Source of the DNA: Pelomyxa schiedti
Lineage: Eukaryota; Protista; Evosea
Reading direction: 5' to 3'
NCBI GenBank assembly: GCA_020536535.1
Contig: JAHLWZ010000814.1
Coordinates: 1-64,000 of the forward strand
DNA length: 64,000 bases
Part shown: positions 54,440-60,100 of the stretch, piece after piece
How the letters are laid out: every line of letters begins with the position of its first letter
How positions within the stretch are numbered: the stretch's first letter is position 1
Translations under genes and position numbers: made by a program
The notes under the pieces: generated by a model
Database searches by the model: none
Seen by the model: the letters and a program-made list of their open reading frames with translations, nothing else
What the model was told of the DNA's origin: nothing

Positions 54440-55706
54440 ATGATCTCAGTGAAGACAGTGGTTGCGGCATTGTGCGTGTTGTTTGTTGCTAGATCCCTTG
54501 CAGCAGGGTGTTTCGATGGATGGTGGGAAATAGGCTCATACGAAATCACTGTCAATGACCCTGTTCGGTGTGTAAGTCTGTTTTGGAGCCTTTGTGCTTG
54601 TGAGAGTTATTTTTGTTCATTTGTAACTCTCGCGTAGTTGGTACAGAAGTACATTTAAGGCTGAAGTACATTACCCAAGCAACGCTGGATCATGCACTTT
54701 CCCCATGGTTGTTTTCAGCCATTCCTACATGCTGGGTGCTGGGTATTTCTTTAGAACTTTGGAGCTATCTCCATATCCTTGTATCACTAATTTCCTGAGC
54801 ACAGGTGTTACGACTATCTATGGACAACCCTGGTTCCCTTGGGGTTTGTATTTGTCGATATGGACGATTTGGCGTATGACCCTCTTGGTATCTGCATTGT
54901 GTCCACATGTTTGCATAACTAATTCCCTCTCAGAGGAACCAATTGAGGCAGGCAAGGATATGGCTGCCACTCGCAATAGGCTCCTTAGTGACAACGTCGA
55001 TGACCCATCAAGCCCCGTCTATGGAAAGTTGAACGGCATTGTTGGAGCCATGGGCCACTCATTTGGAGCTGCTGCGTCCATTGTTGCCACCTCCAGCCCA
55101 AATGTTCTCGCAGAGTACAATGCTACGTGGGATATGGTTCTCCCAATGGCTCCTCCCGATTTCACTGATGTTGTTGACGACTCGATTGTTACCATCCCAG
55201 CCCTTATGATGGGTGCTACGAAAGACTGCATATGCCCTCCCGATACTAACGTGTGCGTATTCATATTTCCAACAGTGGAAAAAATTCCCGAATATTTTTC
55301 TTTTTTTTTTGACATTTCACAGAGACCGTGTCTTCAGCCGGTCAACATCGACTTGCAGGACCCTGATTGACATTGTGAATGGTACTCACTGCAAGTTCTG
55401 TGATTTGGCACCTGTCTTTGAAGATGTAAGACTCTAACTGTTGGGTACATTCGCGAGAGTAACCATACTAAGGCCTGCATTGCTGTTGAAGATGTACCTC
55501 TCACCTGTGGTTCCGTCTTCTTCAGTGACACGATTGATATAGAAATTCAGCACGATCTAGTTTTACGGTACACAGTGCCATGGCTTCAGTACATACTACA
55601 AGGAAACTTGGAGGCTGCCAAGACTCTCTCCAGTGCAGTAGGAGCTGACACTGGCAGTGGCGCTATTGTCTCTCAACATAGCACACCCGCCTGCCCTGGC
55701 TTTTAA
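54440..55706 (+). CDS. Secreted alpha/beta hydrolase (chlorophyllase/cutinase-like)
   Basis: Signal peptide MISVKTVVAALCVLFVARSLA; AEVHYPS...FPMVVFSHSYML; GAMGHSFG nucleophile; LMMGATKDCICP; IVNGTHCKFCD. Ends ACPGF*. Confidence 0.85.
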
Positions 55707-55776
55707 GTGAGCACGGGTGCCTCCTTGAGACTTTGTATTTTGAAAGCATAAATGAACATTGCCCATTCATTGGCAT

Positions 55777-56953
55777 TTAGAGTGAAGAACAATATTTTAT
55801 AGTCCACGGGCAGTTGCACATGCATAGCCCACAAATGCTGTGCCCAAACTTCTCCCTCATAGAACCACAGCTAGTAAAGCAGTGTCAGTGTTAATTGATT
55901 AGAAATGAAAGAAAACGAAAAATGCAATTCCACACAACATACTGTGCAGCACAGGCCTCTACATCTAATAGGTCCTCACGTGATGTTGTTTCTTGTCCTC
56001 GCCATTCAGTCCCTTTCAGTACTCTGGGAGGGCATGCATTGAAGCAAGCTTGACAGGAACCACACCGGGATGCCAATACCTGTGTTTGAGGAGATGGTGG
56101 TGCCATATCACACAGAATGGTGACCAACCTGTGAGAATTAGGTGGACAGAACGGCAAAGAACCAGCGAGAACGGGAGTCCTTCCTACCTGATGGCGCTTC
56201 CAAAGTTCTCGTTGACAAGGAGGCAGGATTTTCCTATCCAGCCTAGTCCAGATAGTGATGCAATGGTTTTGTGAGGTAGTTCAGTGCCAATTGACCCACC
56301 AGGTCCCTAAAAGTACTTGACTTTGAGGGTGCTGACATCATTTGCATAAAATCACATACATTTCGAGGTAAGCTTTGGCTACCCATCAAAGTGGGTGGTA
56401 CAGGTACACTGTCAGGGGCAACGATTAGCGAATTAATAAGACTGATTTAAGGCTCAATATGCATAAGACAAGCAACCAGTTGGATGTAGCAAACAAAAAA
56501 AAAAACACAAAAACACAAACAAACATGGCATTATGGCCCATGCGTCGAATTTCTTCAGTGCACAATTGAGATAGAGCACTCAATACAGTGTTGGCACGCT
56601 CGTACTCGTTTTTGTATTCCATAGAGGGTGCCCCTGACGTCCTAACACCATCCACAATCCGTTTATCCAATCCAACTGCAATACTAGTGGTTTCACGTAG
56701 TTAGAGACACAAGAAGAAAAAACAGGTTATAATTTTGGTGGGTTTTATTCCATGTATTAATAACGGTACATTTGCATTGTTAATCTTCACTTGTTGTGCT
56801 ACATAGGGCGAATTTGAAAAAAAAGTGCCTTATTCCTACAGGCATATTTCGCCTGACATCTGAAGGTATTGCCGTGTGCGTGAGATCTGCAGCTCCCACA
56901 AGTCCAGCCCCGTGCCGTTTTAGCGTCTCAAACAACGCTGCGTACTTGTCCAT
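55777..56953 (-). CDS. Bacterial-type QueG (epoxyqueuosine reductase)/reductive-dehalogenase family protein with two [4Fe-4S] motifs; five introns
   Basis: Spliced: GAGLVGAADL...MPVGISIAVGLD...YKNEYERANTVL...ELPHKTIASLSGLGWIGKSCLLVNENFGSAIR|LVTILCD...CGSCQACFNACP...DVEAC...ICGLCMCNCPWT. Confidence 0.88.
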
Positions 56954-57168
56954 CAGGTGACTGTTTATCGAAATTGTGATTGAATTTCATTGATGAGAAA
57001 CAAGTGAACATCGAGTCGATGTCATTTCAAGATCGATTTGCTTCTAGAAGCTGGGTGACAACTTGGGAAACTTGCCCTGGTTCTGTCTGGCCCACTTTTC
57101 TGTACGACCATTTAAGAGTGAGAGAAAAAGACCAAAGCAACATAAAAAAAACCCAAAAAAGCAACACG

Positions 57169-60100
57169 ATGAAGGGCCACATTCCCTCCACACAAACCGA
57201 CCCGCAGTCTCAACAGCCACAGCAACAAGAACGAAACCAAGCAAGTTATGGGACCCCTCCTCCAGCAACTGCGACGGTGGCGACATCTGCAACTACTTCA
57301 ACAAGGGCCGATTCCCTTGGTCCTACTTTTGCTGCTCCGATTCCCGTTTCCGGAGTGGGTGCTGCTTCTTGTTCGTCGACGAGCCTGGGTTATGGGAACC
57401 AAAGGGACACGTCCACTGCAGCCTATTCCAAAGTTACTGTGAAAGTCATTTTTGATAGCAACTCTGGGAGGCCTTCCCCATCAAGAGTTGTCAGGGAGCT
57501 TAATGCCAATTTTGCCTCTACATTTGGCTCTGGAGTAGTTTCGTCGTGCTCAGATAGGTATTCTGGTTGGAGCTATCCTATTACTTTTGCAAATCCTGAA
57601 ATTGCAAGGCACTTGTTGGGTCTAAGCTGGTAGTGTCTAGCCAAACTTTTTTTTTTTTTTTTGTTTTTCTAACACTCGAATAGCATTACAATTCAGGGAG
57701 TTAGAGCACAAATCCGCAAGTATCGCTTAAAGTCTCCCTATGACCAAGAAATGGAAGCTATTTTGGCACCACATAATATTCGAAAAGACATCACCATCTC
57801 AATAAAACATGGGAGCAGTGCAACTCTCATAAATACTTCTGTTATGTACACTCTGAAAATTACCAATGATGGCTCTAGACCTTTTGACGTGTATTATGTG
57901 AGGTTGGTTCACCCTATGTTTTTTTTTAGGTTTATCTCAACGTCCTGTTAGGAGACTGGGAAGTGGAAACTTCTATCTTCACAAACCCCGTACAGGCATA
58001 ATAGCTCGTTGGTATCCCGTTTCAGTGATTGCATTAACACTCCATAGAAACAATTCTGCCCGAGAAATCAAAAATTGTGAATGTAGAGTTTAAATCGGCA
58101 AAAAAAGGGGTTTGTTTCGCCATTGAAGCCTAATTGCTTACATTACAAGACTTTCACAGCTGTGTTTATTTTTGATACTTCTATTGGCAGTGCGGCTACT
58201 ACAATGTTCTGTGTTGCTAGCAAGCTCAAACCTCCCTGCCAGAAGGCCCCCACTACAGTAGAGTAAGTAGCATACTCTAATTCCGCCATTCTTACTTCTC
58301 AACCAGTGCTCCTAAAGAGGAATCTCCCAAATTTTTACGAGTTGACTTCTTCAAGAATGTAGCTGAGGCCAAATCAAGCCATATCCACAACAAGTACTTG
58401 CCATATGAGTGGTCTTTCCAGGTACAATACCTTTCCTATCTGAGTTGTGTAATTGAGAAATAGCCCCCAGAATATGAGCTTCCATCTGAGTTTTCTCTTG
58501 AAGAACTAAGCCAAAAAATACCTCCACGTGCAGTCAATCCGTGGGCTCAAAGGCAACTGCACAAAAACCGACTTCATGATTTGTTATGGATCGAAGAGGC
58601 ACAATCTCTTCATGACCTTGAGCAATATAGCATACTCAAGGCATCACTCGGTAATTGTTTGACTCAAGATGGAAAGCAAGGTTATTCTGTCACGGTGTGT
58701 ATGTAAACGGGGAAGTGTCACGTAAGTTACTTGAAACTTCAAGGTGCCCGGCATTGCAGAGAGTAGGCCGTCTGTTCAATTCAATGATGAAATCTATGCC
58801 TCCAACGCTCAGGAGAGGGTGGAATACCAGGGATATGTTGTTGGAATTAAAAATCAAGAAGTGATCATGCAATTCAGTGACATATTTGTAAACAAGTAAG
58901 CAATTTCTTTCCTCTCTTCTGTTCGCCTGAGAAATGTAGCTTTCAGCCAAGCAAGAAATATGATATCCGTTTTTCTTTTGATCGGATGTCTATGCGAATC
59001 CTCCATTGGGCTGTTGACAACACATCATTAGATCAGATTTGGCCCAATATCTTGTCTATTGAGGAACCAAGTGCCCCAACAGTGCTAAATGGGCTTAGCA
59101 CCCAGTTTACTTTTGATAGGGAGCAAATGATGTTTATCCAGAATTGCTTTAAAAGGTGGGCAATTTTAGTTTGTTTTCAATATGTTCATCGAGCTTTTGT
59201 TCAGATCCTCCAACAATACTCCTCAAGTTGTGTCTGGGCCTTTTGGAAGTGGTAGTTATTCTCACTCACACTTCCCCTTTCACAGCTCACTTCTGAAAAG
59301 GGAAGACAGCAACTTTAGTGGAAATCATCAAATTGTTATTACTTTCCAGTAACAATAAAATACTTGTTGCCACCCCTACTAATAGGTGATAACCCACTCT
59401 GTTTTCCATTGTCATTCTCAATTACTTTCAGTGCAGCGGACAGCTTTGTTCTTTCCCTGTCAAAAATATTACCCCTGGACTACCTTAAAGTGAATTTACT
59501 ACGTCTGGTTTACTTCCGCAGGTGAAGGGATATCTTGGGAAGACCTAACTAAAGTCTCAAAAATTTTTTTTTGCCCTTTTGATGAAGGCATCGATCCACT
59601 GTACCATCATTTGTCCTGCCCTTCACAATATATGACGACAAGCTGGACATGTTTTCGCTTCCACCCCTGTCCAAACTGCTGCAGTACAAGATAATCATTA
59701 CCACAAGGTAACACTCAACAAAGCACTTCAAGTTTCATCCAACCCTTCGGCAAAGTCTCACTGCTGCGTATCTTGCCTTTGCTGGAGTCGGAAAAGATTT
59801 TTTTACTCACATCATTCTTGATGAGGCTGCTCAAATGTCAGAACCTGATGCGCTTGTAGCACTCAGTTTAGCAACATCTTCAACACGTGTATTCCTTTCT
59901 GGTGATGCCAAACAACTTTCATCACGTGTGAGATCTCGGACGGCCAGAAAAATGGGTCTTCAAACATCTCTTCTGGTTGAATACTTGTGATTTTCTCCCA
60001 AACTTACCTCACACAGGAAAGAATACTTGCTCTAGACGCATATATGTCTGATACTCAATTTCAGACCCATGTTCAGGTTTCTGTTGCCCTTTCTAGTCCG

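What the first reader, a model, noticed from the sequence alone, without database searches (positions are those of the whole stretch)
55777..56953. Intron-containing eukaryotic copy of a bacterial cobalamin/[4Fe-4S] reductase (QueG/reductive dehalogenase family)
The spliced protein (about 250 aa) has the family hallmarks: VGxADL, HKTxAxxSGLGWIGKSCLLV...FGSAIRL, CxxCxxCxxxCP and C-x15-CxxCxxxCP. These are typical of short QueG-like proteins of anaerobic bacteria such as Clostridia. Eukaryotes are not known to make queuosine de novo or to respire organohalides. A domesticated copy with five introns therefore implies horizontal transfer and an unknown B12/Fe-S-dependent reduction: salvage of epoxyqueuosine from prey or endosymbiont tRNA, cobalamin processing, or dehalogenation. 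This is the best candidate in the window for an undescribed pathway.
Basis: partly seen in the sequence, partly recalled or inferred. Interest (0 to 1): 0.78.

Follow-up and report, generated by a model that had tools for sequence, protein, structure and literature searches.

The report
Bacterial-type B12/iron-sulfur reductase gene in an amoeba
The anaerobic amoeba Pelomyxa schiedti carries a real, spliced nuclear gene, taken long ago from bacteria, for a small enzyme of the vitamin-B12/iron-sulfur reductase class; databases call it a queuosine (tRNA) enzyme, but it lacks that enzyme's defining parts and its substrate is unknown.

Summary
Intron 1 is GC-AG. An RNA contig shows intron 4 spliced.

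The genome is Pelomyxa schiedti. The gene is in GenBank as 'epoxyqueuosine reductase'. That model wrongly splices out 42 nt, which deletes the first Fe-S motif.

The protein aligns end to end (E 4e-51, up to 45% identity) with a large family of about 235-aa proteins of anaerobic bacteria and archaea. It nests among bacterial sequences, and I saw no other eukaryote with it. Horizontal transfer is therefore supported, but the donor is unresolved.

It is not QueG:
- It has no HEAT-like tRNA-binding domain and no DYH motif.
- The catalytic Asp is Ile.
- Scores are far below the QueG and RdhA family cut-offs.

The predicted fold matches QueG and reductive dehalogenases equally well (Z 14-15). All eight Cys are kept, and an invariant Arg aligns with PceA Arg305.

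Best reading: a working, minimal 'class III' corrinoid/[4Fe-4S] reductase for a small substrate, or for the corrinoid itself. Corrinoid binding and the substrate are untested.

The parts
56829..56953 (-). Exon 1 (ATG at 56953): residues 1-41 plus 2 nt, including GAGLVGAADL
   Evidence: The same N-terminus is used in GenBank protein P0121. It aligns with the N-termini of the bacterial homologues.
56684..56828 (-). Intron 1, 145 nt, GC-AG, phase 2
   Evidence: It is the only junction that keeps the frame and gives 'VGISIAVGLD', colinear with the bacterial 'AVSIAVALD'. P0121 uses the same junction. GC-AG introns make up 1.59% of P. schiedti introns (PMC8887013). No RNA contig covers it.
56525..56683 (-). 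Exon 2: holds the family-invariant Y65, E68, Y69, R71 and N73 at the start of the long helix
56409..56524 (-). Intron 2, 116 nt, GT-AG, phase 2; contains an A/C-rich low-complexity run
   Evidence: Not covered by RNA contigs.
56360..56408 (-). Exon 3 (49 nt): the variable loop VPVPPTLMGSQSLPRN
   Evidence: This region has low pLDDT in the model.
56307..56359 (-). Intron 3, 53 nt, GT-AG, phase 0
   Evidence: The RNA contig ends exactly at 56306, the 5' edge of exon 4.
56188..56306 (-). Exon 4: the family signature LPHKTIASLSGLGWIGKSCLLVNENFGSAI(R)
   Evidence: It matches positions 130-158 of TIGR00276 at 23.4 bits. It is covered by an RNA contig.
56129..56187 (-). Intron 4, 59 nt, GT-AG, phase 2; seen spliced in RNA
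   Evidence: RNA contig record 6 of run X3 joins 56126/56186 ('cut +2', CT..AC on the + strand). That is removal of 56129-56187.
55943..56128 (-). Exon 5: R151 (aligned with PceA Arg305), the first cluster motif CGSCQACFNACP, the W193/R201 loop and Cys210
   Evidence: An RNA contig runs without a break over 55985-56126.
56024..56065 (-). A 42-nt GT..AG segment inside exon 5. The GenBank model treats it as an intron, which deletes CGSCQACFNACPPR.
   Evidence: P0121 lacks these 14 residues. The RNA contig keeps them, and all homologues have the motif.
55871..55942 (-). Intron 5, 72 nt, GT-AG, phase 2
   Evidence: Not covered by RNA contigs.
55777..55870 (-). Exon 6: the second cluster motif CGLCMCNCPWT and the stop codon (55777-55779)
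55400..55782 (+). 3' end of the convergent neighbour gene (a PETase-like hydrolase). It has a 47-nt GT-AG intron at 55426-55472 and a poly(A) site at 55782, and it overlaps the stop codon of the reductase gene by 6 nt.
   Evidence: RNA contigs of X3 and X6, the joint, and a loose end of A's..

Best explanation
This is a working nuclear gene of Pelomyxa schiedti, acquired from an anaerobic bacterium and since given five spliceosomal introns. It encodes the minimal core of a 'class III' corrinoid enzyme: a nitroreductase-like corrinoid-binding domain of about 150 aa followed by a ferredoxin domain with two [4Fe-4S] clusters, and nothing else.

Inferred mechanism, by analogy with the solved relatives: reduced ferredoxin feeds electrons through the two clusters to a base-off corrinoid. 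Lys124 of the invariant HK motif lies under the corrin, where QueG has Arg141. The resulting Co(I) attacks a small substrate and removes a leaving group, a halide or an oxygen function. An invariant Tyr (Y65 or Y69) and Arg151, the counterpart of PceA Arg305, would supply the proton.

It is not the tRNA enzyme QueG. It belongs to a large, uncharacterised family of about 235-aa proteins in strict anaerobes that pipelines mislabel 'epoxyqueuosine reductase'.

Shown here: the gene structure, splicing of intron 4, the eukaryotic context, family membership, the fold, and retention of conserved residues.

Inferred only: corrinoid binding, the electron donor, the chemistry and the substrate.
For: Gene and its context:
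- Six-exon model.
- A spliced RNA contig across intron 4, and a polyadenylated, spliced convergent neighbour.
- GenBank contig JAHLWZ010000814.1 is 117.8 kb, with PRELI, EMP24 and MOV10-like neighbours.
- CDS GC is 48.6% against 36.6% in the introns.

Family:
- End-to-end blastp hits, E 4e-51.
- 3720 proteins at E<=1e-10.
- The best hit after the protein itself scores 134 bits against 522, at 36-41% identity.

Signs that the protein works:
- It keeps 56 of 63 columns that are at least 90% conserved in 62 prokaryote relatives, including all 8 Cys.
- The three exonic differences between two DNA contigs are all synonymous.

Fold:
- AF2 model of the nearest bacterial relative: pLDDT 94. All top 46 PDB matches are QueG, PceA or NpRdhA (TMq 0.62-0.71), followed by MMACHC.
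- The Pelomyxa model gives Z 14.9 to QueG residues 4-256, 14.4 to PceA and 14.0 to NpRdhA.

Active-site residues:
- Arg151 aligns with PceA Arg305 and with the NpRdhA Lys, whereas QueG has Tyr there.
- Lys124 aligns with QueG Arg141.

Transfer:
- The protein nests among bacterial rows.
- The nearest relative with a long contig lies beside CotJ spore-coat genes.

Corrinoid supply and use:
- B12-dependent methionine synthase is reported in P. schiedti (PMC8887013).
- RACo and MtaA-like (URO-D) genes lie beside the family gene in 4 loci from 3 phyla.
Against: - No member of the short family has, to my knowledge or in the literature searches, been shown to bind a corrinoid or to have any activity. 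Class III enzymes have no sequence motif for corrinoid binding (PMC4646009).
- Which invariant Tyr sits above the corrin is ambiguous: MAFFT and hhalign disagree.
- RNA evidence covers only exons 4-5.
- There is no gene neighbourhood conserved across the family that would point to a substrate.
- The tree placement is only moderately supported (87/83, 73/93; no starred clade in the careful tree).
Confidence: 0.6

Rival explanations
1. It is a corrinoid-processing or corrinoid-activating enzyme, an anaerobic counterpart of CblC/MMACHC. The bound corrinoid would be the substrate: it is reduced through the two Fe-S clusters to strip or exchange its upper ligand, serving methionine synthase and other B12 enzymes of the amoeba.
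For: - MMACHC is the next structural match after QueG and RdhA (E 9e-4; Z 8.8).
- RACo (reductive activator of corrinoid enzymes) and MtaA-like URO-D methyltransferase genes flank the family gene in Nitrospirota, Peptococcaceae and Latescibacterota loci.
- The family is highly conserved with one apparent active site across bacteria and archaea. That fits a universal substrate such as a corrinoid better than diverse xenobiotics.
- P. schiedti has B12-dependent MetH. Earlier unchecked scan notes report several B12 radical-SAM genes in this genome.
Against: - The corrinoid-linked context appears in only 4 of 102 loci.
- The fold is much closer to QueG and RdhA, where the corrinoid is a fixed cofactor (Z 14-15 against 8.8).
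- I know of no biochemical precedent for an Fe-S-containing CblC analogue.
Confidence: 0.15
2. It is a true epoxyqueuosine reductase, acting on tRNA or on free epoxyqueuosine/epoxyqueuine salvaged from prey or symbionts.
For: - JGI and NCBI pipelines give the family and the Pelomyxa protein this name.
- QueG is the top sequence match in the PDB (E 1.7e-18 with the family profile), and TIGR00276 is the best NCBIfam hit.
Against: - Scores of 51-75 bits (relatives) and 23 bits (P0121) fall far below the TIGR00276 cut-off of 200.
- The alignment and fold match stop at QueG residue 256-257, where the HEAT-like tRNA-binding domain begins (PMC5175355).
- The QueG insert in the corrinoid domain is missing.
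- The DYH motif is absent under either alignment, and the catalytic Asp134 position is Ile (PMC4646009).
- The Arg151 position is Tyr in QueG.
- At least 11 archaeal loci carry the family, including methanogens, Bathyarchaeota and Nitrososphaeria, and archaea are not known to make queuosine.
Confidence: 0.08
3. It is an Fe-S redox protein that no longer binds, or never bound, a corrinoid. The N-terminal nitroreductase-like domain would bind a flavin, another ligand, or nothing.
For: - No corrinoid-binding sequence motif exists to check (PMC4646009).
- Flavin nitroreductases are remote structural matches (Z about 6).
- Pfam recognises only the ferredoxin part.
Against: - Every strong structural match is a corrinoid protein: QueG, PceA, NpRdhA, then MMACHC and CblD. 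Flavin nitroreductases lie far below.
- The HK/Arg141 position and the Arg305 position are both invariant.
Confidence: 0.1
4. It is not a working amoebal gene. It is either bacterial or endosymbiont contamination, or a decaying relic of a transfer.
For: - Pelomyxa harbours Syntrophus, Vesiculincola and Methanoregula symbionts (PMC10579272).
- RNA contigs cover only exons 4-5, at low depth.
- The GenBank model lacks a cluster motif.
Against: - There are five introns with eukaryotic splice signals, and intron 4 is removed in RNA.
- The gene sits inside a 117.8-kb contig between eukaryote-specific genes and is present in two DNA assemblies.
- The reading frame is intact, 56 of 63 conserved columns are kept, and the allelic differences are synonymous only.
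- Syntrophales and Methanoregulaceae homologues are only about 30% identical.
- The 42 nt that GenBank removes are present in RNA.
Confidence: 0.04

Closest known systems
Epoxyqueuosine reductase QueG (TIGR00276; PDB 5D08, 5D0B, 5D6S)
   Same: - The corrinoid-binding and two-[4Fe-4S] ferredoxin core match: Z 14.9 over QueG residues 4-256, and hhalign probability 98.9% over E. coli QueG 7-257.
- The AGLGW-GK segment is shared.
- A basic residue (Lys) stands where QueG has Arg141 under the corrin.
- All eight cluster Cys are present.
   Different: - No C-terminal HEAT-like tRNA-binding domain, which is about 130 aa in QueG.
- No roughly 28-aa insert in the corrinoid domain.
- No DYH motif, and the catalytic Asp is replaced by Ile.
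- Arg where QueG has Tyr in the GS..(R/Y)L segment.
- Scores are a quarter or less of the family cut-off.
Reductive dehalogenases RdhA: PceA (PDB 4UQU, 8Q4H) and the catabolic NpRdhA (4RAS, 6ZY1)
   Same: - The fold match is as good as to QueG: Z 14.0-14.4, TMq 0.70-0.71.
- The invariant Arg151 aligns with PceA Arg305 and the corresponding NpRdhA Lys, the partner of the catalytic Tyr.
- The GA-LVG-A-L N-terminal strand is shared (domain 1).
   Different: - About half the size.
- No Tat signal, N-terminal extension, RdhB partner or reductase module.
- It scores 36-56 bits against TIGR02486, whose cut-off is 160.
- The active-site residues are highly conserved across phyla, unlike the variable RdhA pockets.
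Short 'epoxyqueuosine reductase family' / Fer4_16-only proteins of anaerobic bacteria and archaea (about 220-250 aa, uncharacterised)
   Same: - Full-length colinear homology at 30-45% identity.
- The same length.
- 56 of 63 highly conserved columns are kept.
- Predicted structures within the family are near-identical (TM 0.84-0.96 between P0180 and ESM Atlas clusters).
   Different: - The Pelomyxa copy is the only one seen in a eukaryote and the only one with introns.
- It has a longer, poorly modelled loop before the HK motif (exon 3).
CblC / MMACHC, the eukaryotic B12-processing enzyme
   Same: It has the same nitroreductase-like corrinoid-binding fold (Z 8.8; Foldseek E 9e-4). It is the only relative of this fold previously known in eukaryotes (own knowledge; PMC4646009 describes it as distantly related).
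   Different: MMACHC has no ferredoxin domain and uses flavin or glutathione. Sequence identity is about 9%.

Membership tests
QueG (tRNA epoxyqueuosine(34) reductase, TIGR00276) | Score at or above the curated cut-off of 200 bits | tested here: not met
   Exon pieces score 23.4 and 17.8 bits. GenBank protein P0121 scores 22.9 bits. Intact bacterial relatives score 51-75 bits.
QueG (tRNA epoxyqueuosine(34) reductase, TIGR00276) | C-terminal HEAT-like tRNA-binding domain (B. subtilis Leu257-Leu385) | tested here: not met
   The protein ends 10 residues after the last CP motif. The alignment with E. coli QueG stops at 257 of 379. The structural match covers QueG 4-256 only. Domain borders are from PMC5175355.
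QueG (tRNA epoxyqueuosine(34) reductase, TIGR00276) | Strictly conserved DYH motif and catalytic Asp (Asp134 in B. subtilis, Asp130 in S. thermophilus) | tested here: not met
   DYH aligns with E-Y-E under MAFFT or falls in a gap under hhalign. The Asp position is Ile in Pelomyxa and varies across the family under both alignments. The motif definitions are from PMC4646009 and PMC5175355.
QueG (tRNA epoxyqueuosine(34) reductase, TIGR00276) | Arg under the corrin ring (Arg141) | tested here: inconclusive
   The aligned residue is the invariant Lys of the HK motif. It is basic but not Arg, and its position was not checked in coordinates.
Reductive dehalogenase RdhA (TIGR02486) | Score at or above the curated cut-off of 160.35 bits | tested here: not met
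   Relatives score 36-56 bits. The exon 6 piece scores 10 bits.
Reductive dehalogenase RdhA (TIGR02486) | Catalytic Tyr plus Arg/Lys pair (PceA Tyr246-Arg305; NpRdhA Tyr-Lys) | tested here: inconclusive
   Arg is met: the invariant R151 aligns with PceA R305 and the NpRdhA Lys. For Tyr, two invariant residues (Y65, Y69) lie at the start of the long helix, but their equivalence to Tyr246 was not shown, because the sequence alignments do not reach that region.
Reductive dehalogenase RdhA (TIGR02486) | Tat signal with RdhB anchor (respiratory type) or a fused reductase/vestigial domain (catabolic type); length over 300 aa | tested here: not met
   The protein is 243 aa and its N-terminus is colinear with the bacterial homologues, with no extension. 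No anchor gene is conserved next to family members.
Class III corrinoid/[4Fe-4S] enzymes (the QueG + RdhA superfamily) | Nitroreductase-like corrinoid domain followed by a bacterial-type 2x[4Fe-4S] ferredoxin domain | tested here: met
   The predicted models match only class III enzymes at the top. The motifs CxxCxxCxxxCP and C...CxxCxxxCP are both present.
Class III corrinoid/[4Fe-4S] enzymes (the QueG + RdhA superfamily) | Bound base-off corrinoid | not testable with these tools
   There is no sequence motif for it (PMC4646009). It needs purified protein and UV-vis, EPR or metal analysis.
Short Fer4_16-only 'epoxyqueuosine reductase family' of anaerobes | Full-length colinear similarity, plus the invariant residues H, K, GLGWIGK, R, W and 8 Cys | tested here: met
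   E 4e-51 over residues 7-242. 56 of 63 conserved columns are kept.
Eukaryotic spliceosomal-intron gene (as opposed to contaminant DNA) | Introns with splice signals that are removed in RNA, and eukaryotic flanking genes on the same contig | tested here: met
   Five introns. Intron 4 is removed in an RNA contig, and the neighbour is spliced and polyadenylated. PRELI and EMP24 neighbours lie on the 117.8-kb contig. Introns 1, 2, 3 and 5 were not seen in RNA.

The most novel reading that the evidence does not exclude
Pelomyxa schiedti would be the first eukaryote known to use a class III (QueG/RdhA-type) corrinoid-iron-sulfur enzyme. That would add a further kind of B12-dependent enzyme to the few known in eukaryotes. 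The enzyme would represent a third, uncharacterised branch of the class. It is minimal in size, carries the RdhA-type Arg and lacks the QueG motifs. Its conserved substrate, an organohalide, an oxygenated metabolite or the corrinoid itself, is shared by thousands of anaerobic bacteria and archaea. Corrinoid-rich methanogenic and syntrophic endosymbionts may have made such enzymes usable by the amoeba.
Probability: 0.45. Interest if true: 0.65.

Novelty: new variant of a known kind. Interest (0 to 1): 0.5.

Why it matters
By established knowledge, eukaryotes use very few B12-dependent enzymes: methionine synthase, methylmalonyl-CoA mutase and, in some protists, a class II ribonucleotide reductase. 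A working class III corrinoid/Fe-S reductase in an amoeba would widen that list.

It would also give a eukaryotic handle on a very large prokaryotic family that is currently mislabelled 'epoxyqueuosine reductase'. Payne et al. foresaw that further B12/[4Fe-4S] families might exist (PMC4646009).

There are two practical points:
- The GenBank model deletes an Fe-S motif and carries a misleading name.
- Counting this family as QueG inflates inferred queuosine biosynthesis and B12 dependence in metagenome surveys.

Against this, gene transfer from anaerobic bacteria into Archamoebae is common, and nothing here shows the chemistry.

Tried and rejected
1. Gene model with a GT donor at 56803 and the acceptor at 56675 (model B, 249 aa). 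Rejected: it inserts RHFFFKFALF and loses SIAV relative to all homologues.
With exon 5 it gave 485 pattern matches but no relative. I replaced it with a degenerate DNA pattern for HK..A...GLGWIGK, which gave 120 loci.
3. An alignment of one bacterial scaffold plus the exon pieces (A2) was badly aligned and I dropped it. A1 was used instead, but its ranking was dominated by Zixibacteria.
4. A search for a gene neighbourhood shared across 102 prokaryote loci found none. Only small lineage-limited associations appeared.
5. Literature searches for a description of this gene, or of short QueG homologues, found nothing; supplements of PMC8887013; no supplements are held for PMC8136499. The cold-seep RdhA survey excludes proteins under 300 aa.
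6. A scan of JGI metagenome contigs for close relatives found none.
8. Contamination and pseudogene readings were rejected (see rivals).
9. I did not type the spliced 243-aa protein into any tool. Full-length comparisons were done in scripts from window coordinates, and the database searches used P0121 (229 aa, lacking 14 residues) or exon pieces.
Full report
**What is in the sequence**

Reading the minus strand of 55650-57100 in three frames and fixing the splice sites by frame gives a six-exon gene.

- Exons: 56953-56829, 56683-56525, 56408-56360, 56306-56188, 56128-55943, 55870-55777. They sum to 732 nt, or 243 codons plus the stop.
- Introns: 145, 116, 53, 59 and 72 nt.
- Four introns are GT-AG.
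- Intron 1 keeps the frame only with a GC donor (AAG|gcactt) and the acceptor cactag|.
- That junction yields PVGISIAVGLD, which aligns without a gap to the bacterial FAVSIAVALD. GenBank uses the same junction.
- GC-AG introns make up 1.59% of introns in this species (PMC8887013).
- An alternative GT donor (model B) inserts ten residues that no homologue has, so I rejected it.

Exons have 48.6% G+C and introns 36.6%. The window holds only this one copy.

**Is it a real eukaryotic gene?**

The protein search returned the window's own product as 'epoxyqueuosine reductase [Pelomyxa schiedti]' (P0121). It is encoded on GenBank contig JAHLWZ010000814.1 of assembly GCA_020536535.1, which is 117,788 bp. 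Its neighbours are a MOV10-like helicase, a PETase-like hydrolase, a PRELI protein and an EMP24/GP25L protein. The last two are eukaryote-typical families.

Laying the contigs of four public runs on 55400-57400 showed three things:

- A single-cell RNA-seq contig joins 56126 to 56186 (cut +2). That removes 56129-56187, which is my intron 4. The contig ends exactly at the 5' edge of exon 4.
- The convergent neighbour is spliced (55426-55472, GT-AG) and polyadenylated at 55782. It overlaps the reductase stop codon by 6 nt.
- Two DNA contigs carry the locus. One differs from the window at three exonic sites (56659, 56849, 56861). All three are synonymous third positions (R50, R35, S31). Substitutions and indels are dense in the upstream intergenic region.

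RNA contigs do not cover exons 1-3 and 6, so introns 1, 2, 3 and 5 rest on frame, homology and the GenBank model.

**An error in the public model**

P0121 has 229 aa. It equals my model except that it lacks CGSCQACFNACPPR. The annotators spliced out a 42-nt GT..AG segment, 56024-56065. The RNA contig runs without a break through 55985-56126, and every homologue has this motif. The 42 nt are therefore coding, and the public model deletes three of the four ligands of the first motif.

**What family is it?**

- Exon pieces hit QueG model TIGR00276 at colinear positions, but weakly: 23.4 and 17.8 bits against a cut-off of 200. Pfam sees only a ferredoxin domain.
- A degenerate DNA pattern for HK..A...GLGWIGK fetched 120 prokaryote loci.
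- The spliced protein aligns over residues 7-242 with their 220-250-aa ORFs. The best matches are Zixibacteria at E 4e-51 and 40% identity.
- A profile search found 3720 proteins at E<=1e-10. Nearly all are about 235 aa, carry only Pfam Fer4_16, and are named 'epoxyqueuosine reductase' by JGI or '4Fe-4S double cluster binding domain-containing protein' by NCBI.
- Intact family members score 51-75 bits against QueG (cut-off 200) and 36-56 bits against RDH TIGR02486 (cut-off 160).
- The family profile matches PDB QueG (E 1.7e-18), PceA (1.5e-14) and NpRdhA (1.3e-7) only from the HK motif onward.

**Fold**

- An AlphaFold model of the nearest bacterial relative with a long contig (P0180) has pLDDT 94 and pTM 0.90.
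- Its top 46 PDB matches are all QueG (TMq 0.62), PceA (0.70) or NpRdhA (0.71), followed by MMACHC.
- The model of the Pelomyxa protein (P0121, pLDDT 85) gives Z 14.9 to QueG residues 4-256, 14.4 to PceA 141-398, 14.0 to NpRdhA 350-576, 8.8 to MMACHC and about 6 to flavin nitroreductases.
- The protein is therefore the bare corrinoid-plus-ferredoxin core of class III enzymes, about equally distant from QueG and RdhA.

**Why it is not QueG**

- The alignment with E. coli QueG ends at residue 257 of 379. That is where the HEAT-like tRNA-binding domain starts (B. subtilis Leu257-Leu385; PMC5175355).
- QueG's roughly 28-residue insert in the corrinoid domain is missing.
- The QueG-specific DYH motif (PMC4646009) is either E-Y-E (MAFFT) or falls in a gap (hhalign).
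- The catalytic Asp (Asp134) aligns with Ile in Pelomyxa, and with variable residues across the family, under both alignments.
- At least eleven of the loci are archaeal: Methanobrevibacter, Methanosphaera, Methanothrix, Methanospirillum, Methanoregulaceae, Methanoperedens, Bathyarchaeota, Nitrososphaeria and others. By established knowledge archaea lack queuosine.

**What it shares with dehalogenases**

The family-invariant Arg (Pelomyxa R151, in FGSAIRL) aligns with PceA Arg305 and with the Lys of NpRdhA. QueG has Tyr at that position. Payne et al. note that QueG has no equivalent of Arg305, the partner of the catalytic Tyr.

Two invariant Tyr residues (Y65, Y69) sit at the start of the long helix, where QueG has its Tyr. 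Which of them lies over the corrin is unresolved. The invariant Lys of the HK motif aligns with QueG Arg141, which lies under the corrin.

**Is the amoebal copy still under constraint?**

It keeps 56 of 63 columns that are at least 90% conserved in 62 prokaryote relatives. These include all eight Cys, HK, GLGWIGK, R151, W193 and R201. The reading frame is open, the RNA is spliced, and the few allelic differences are synonymous.

**Origin**

- An exhaustive phmmer search of the 61-aa exon 5 piece against 1.84 billion representatives found 33 hits. One was the protein itself, and all the others were at most 52% identical over the piece.
- With P0121 as query, the self-hit scores 522 bits and the next hit 134 bits at 36-41% identity. 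All named hits are bacterial.
- JGI metagenome contigs hold no close relative.
- In trees of 122 rows, Pelomyxa groups with three metagenome proteins: P0208 (87/83), then P0180 and P0226 (73/93). These lie inside a 48-row clade with Zixibacteria, Atribacterota, Synergistota, Latescibacterota and a Bacillota row (83/94 in the careful tree; 96 in the quick tree).
- P0180 lies on a 39-kb contig beside CotJA/CotJB/Mn-catalase genes, so it comes from a spore-forming Bacillota. P0226 lies on compact bacterial contigs.
- Homologues from Syntrophales and Methanoregulaceae, the lineages of today's symbionts, are only about 30% identical.

The best reading is an old transfer from an unsampled anaerobic bacterium. 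The donor phylum is unresolved, and the family tree itself does not follow taxonomy.

Whether other Archamoebae have the gene could not be tested beyond these databases.

**Clues to function from prokaryotes**

No neighbourhood is shared across 102 loci. Small associations exist:

- RACo and MtaA-like URO-D methyltransferase genes lie beside the gene in Nitrospirota (2 loci), Peptococcaceae and Latescibacterota.
- The family is fused to a GNAT acetyltransferase in a Sedimentisphaerales protein (L031) and in a 54-member Bacillota cluster of the ESM Atlas. A GNAT gene is also adjacent in three Methanobrevibacter genomes.
- An AraC/GyrI-like regulator lies upstream in three Bacteroidales.

These point to small-molecule or corrinoid-linked chemistry rather than tRNA, but they are few and partly lineage-bound.

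**Context in the amoeba**

P. schiedti has B12-dependent methionine synthase (PMC8887013). It lives with methanogenic and syntrophic endosymbionts (PMC10579272). Earlier notes of this scan, which I did not check, report several intron-bearing bacterial-type B12 radical-SAM genes in the same genome.

I found no paper that mentions this gene.

**Verdict**

The most likely mechanism is ferredoxin-driven reductive chemistry at Co(I) of a bound corrinoid, acting on a small substrate, with a Tyr/Arg proton relay as in dehalogenases. A CblC-like corrinoid-processing role is the main rival. Corrinoid binding, the electron donor and the substrate are all inferred, not shown.

Interest is moderate. It is a credible first eukaryotic member of class III corrinoid enzymes and a pointer to a large mislabelled family, but gene transfer into Archamoebae is common and the function is unknown.

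Noticed in passing
window 56024-56065 (minus strand, inside exon 5): The GenBank protein for this gene (P0121, 229 aa) omits CGSCQACFNACPPR because a 42-nt GT..AG stretch was annotated as an intron. An RNA contig keeps these bases. The public model therefore lacks most of the first Fe-S cluster motif.
   Followed up: yes
window 55400-55782 (+ strand): The convergent neighbour is a PETase-like alpha/beta hydrolase. It is expressed, has a 47-nt intron (55426-55472), and is polyadenylated at 55782. That is 6 nt inside the reductase gene's last codons, so the two 3' ends overlap.
   Followed up: partly
window 56659-57207: One of the two DNA contigs (run X2) differs from the window by 25 substitutions and many small indels. 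They are concentrated in the intergenic stretch 56965-57207, upstream of the reductase ATG, and there are none between 55400 and 56658. This looks like a second haplotype or strain joined in mosaic.
   Followed up: partly
L031:3745-4938 (minus strand) and an ESM Atlas cluster (row 3); also L047, L049, L104: The short reductase family occurs fused to a C-terminal GNAT acetyltransferase in a Sedimentisphaerales MAG and in a 54-member Bacillota cluster. A GNAT gene also lies divergently next to it in three Methanobrevibacter genomes. This may be a clue to an amine-bearing substrate.
   Followed up: partly
L001, L030, L119, L085: In Nitrospirota, Peptococcaceae and Latescibacterota, the family gene lies beside RACo (reductive activator of corrinoid enzymes) and/or an MtaA-like URO-D methyltransferase. 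This links it to corrinoid methyl-transfer systems.
   Followed up: partly
L008, L017, L056: In Bacteroides, Parabacteroides and a Bacteroidaceae MAG, an AraC-type regulator with a GyrI-like small-molecule-binding domain sits directly upstream on the same strand.
   Followed up: no
L122:6995-7936 (minus strand): Next to the closest bacterial relative P0180 lies a 313-aa paralogue. It matches QueG model positions 52-305 at 121.8 bits, still under the cut-off of 200. A third, intermediate-length form of the family therefore exists in the same genome.
   Followed up: no
window 55777-55788 (C-terminus of the protein): The amoebal protein ends in -CSSL, where the bacterial relatives end in basic tails. 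-SSL resembles weak peroxisomal PTS1 signals, and P. schiedti has anaerobic peroxisomes. This is pure speculation and was not tested.
   Followed up: no
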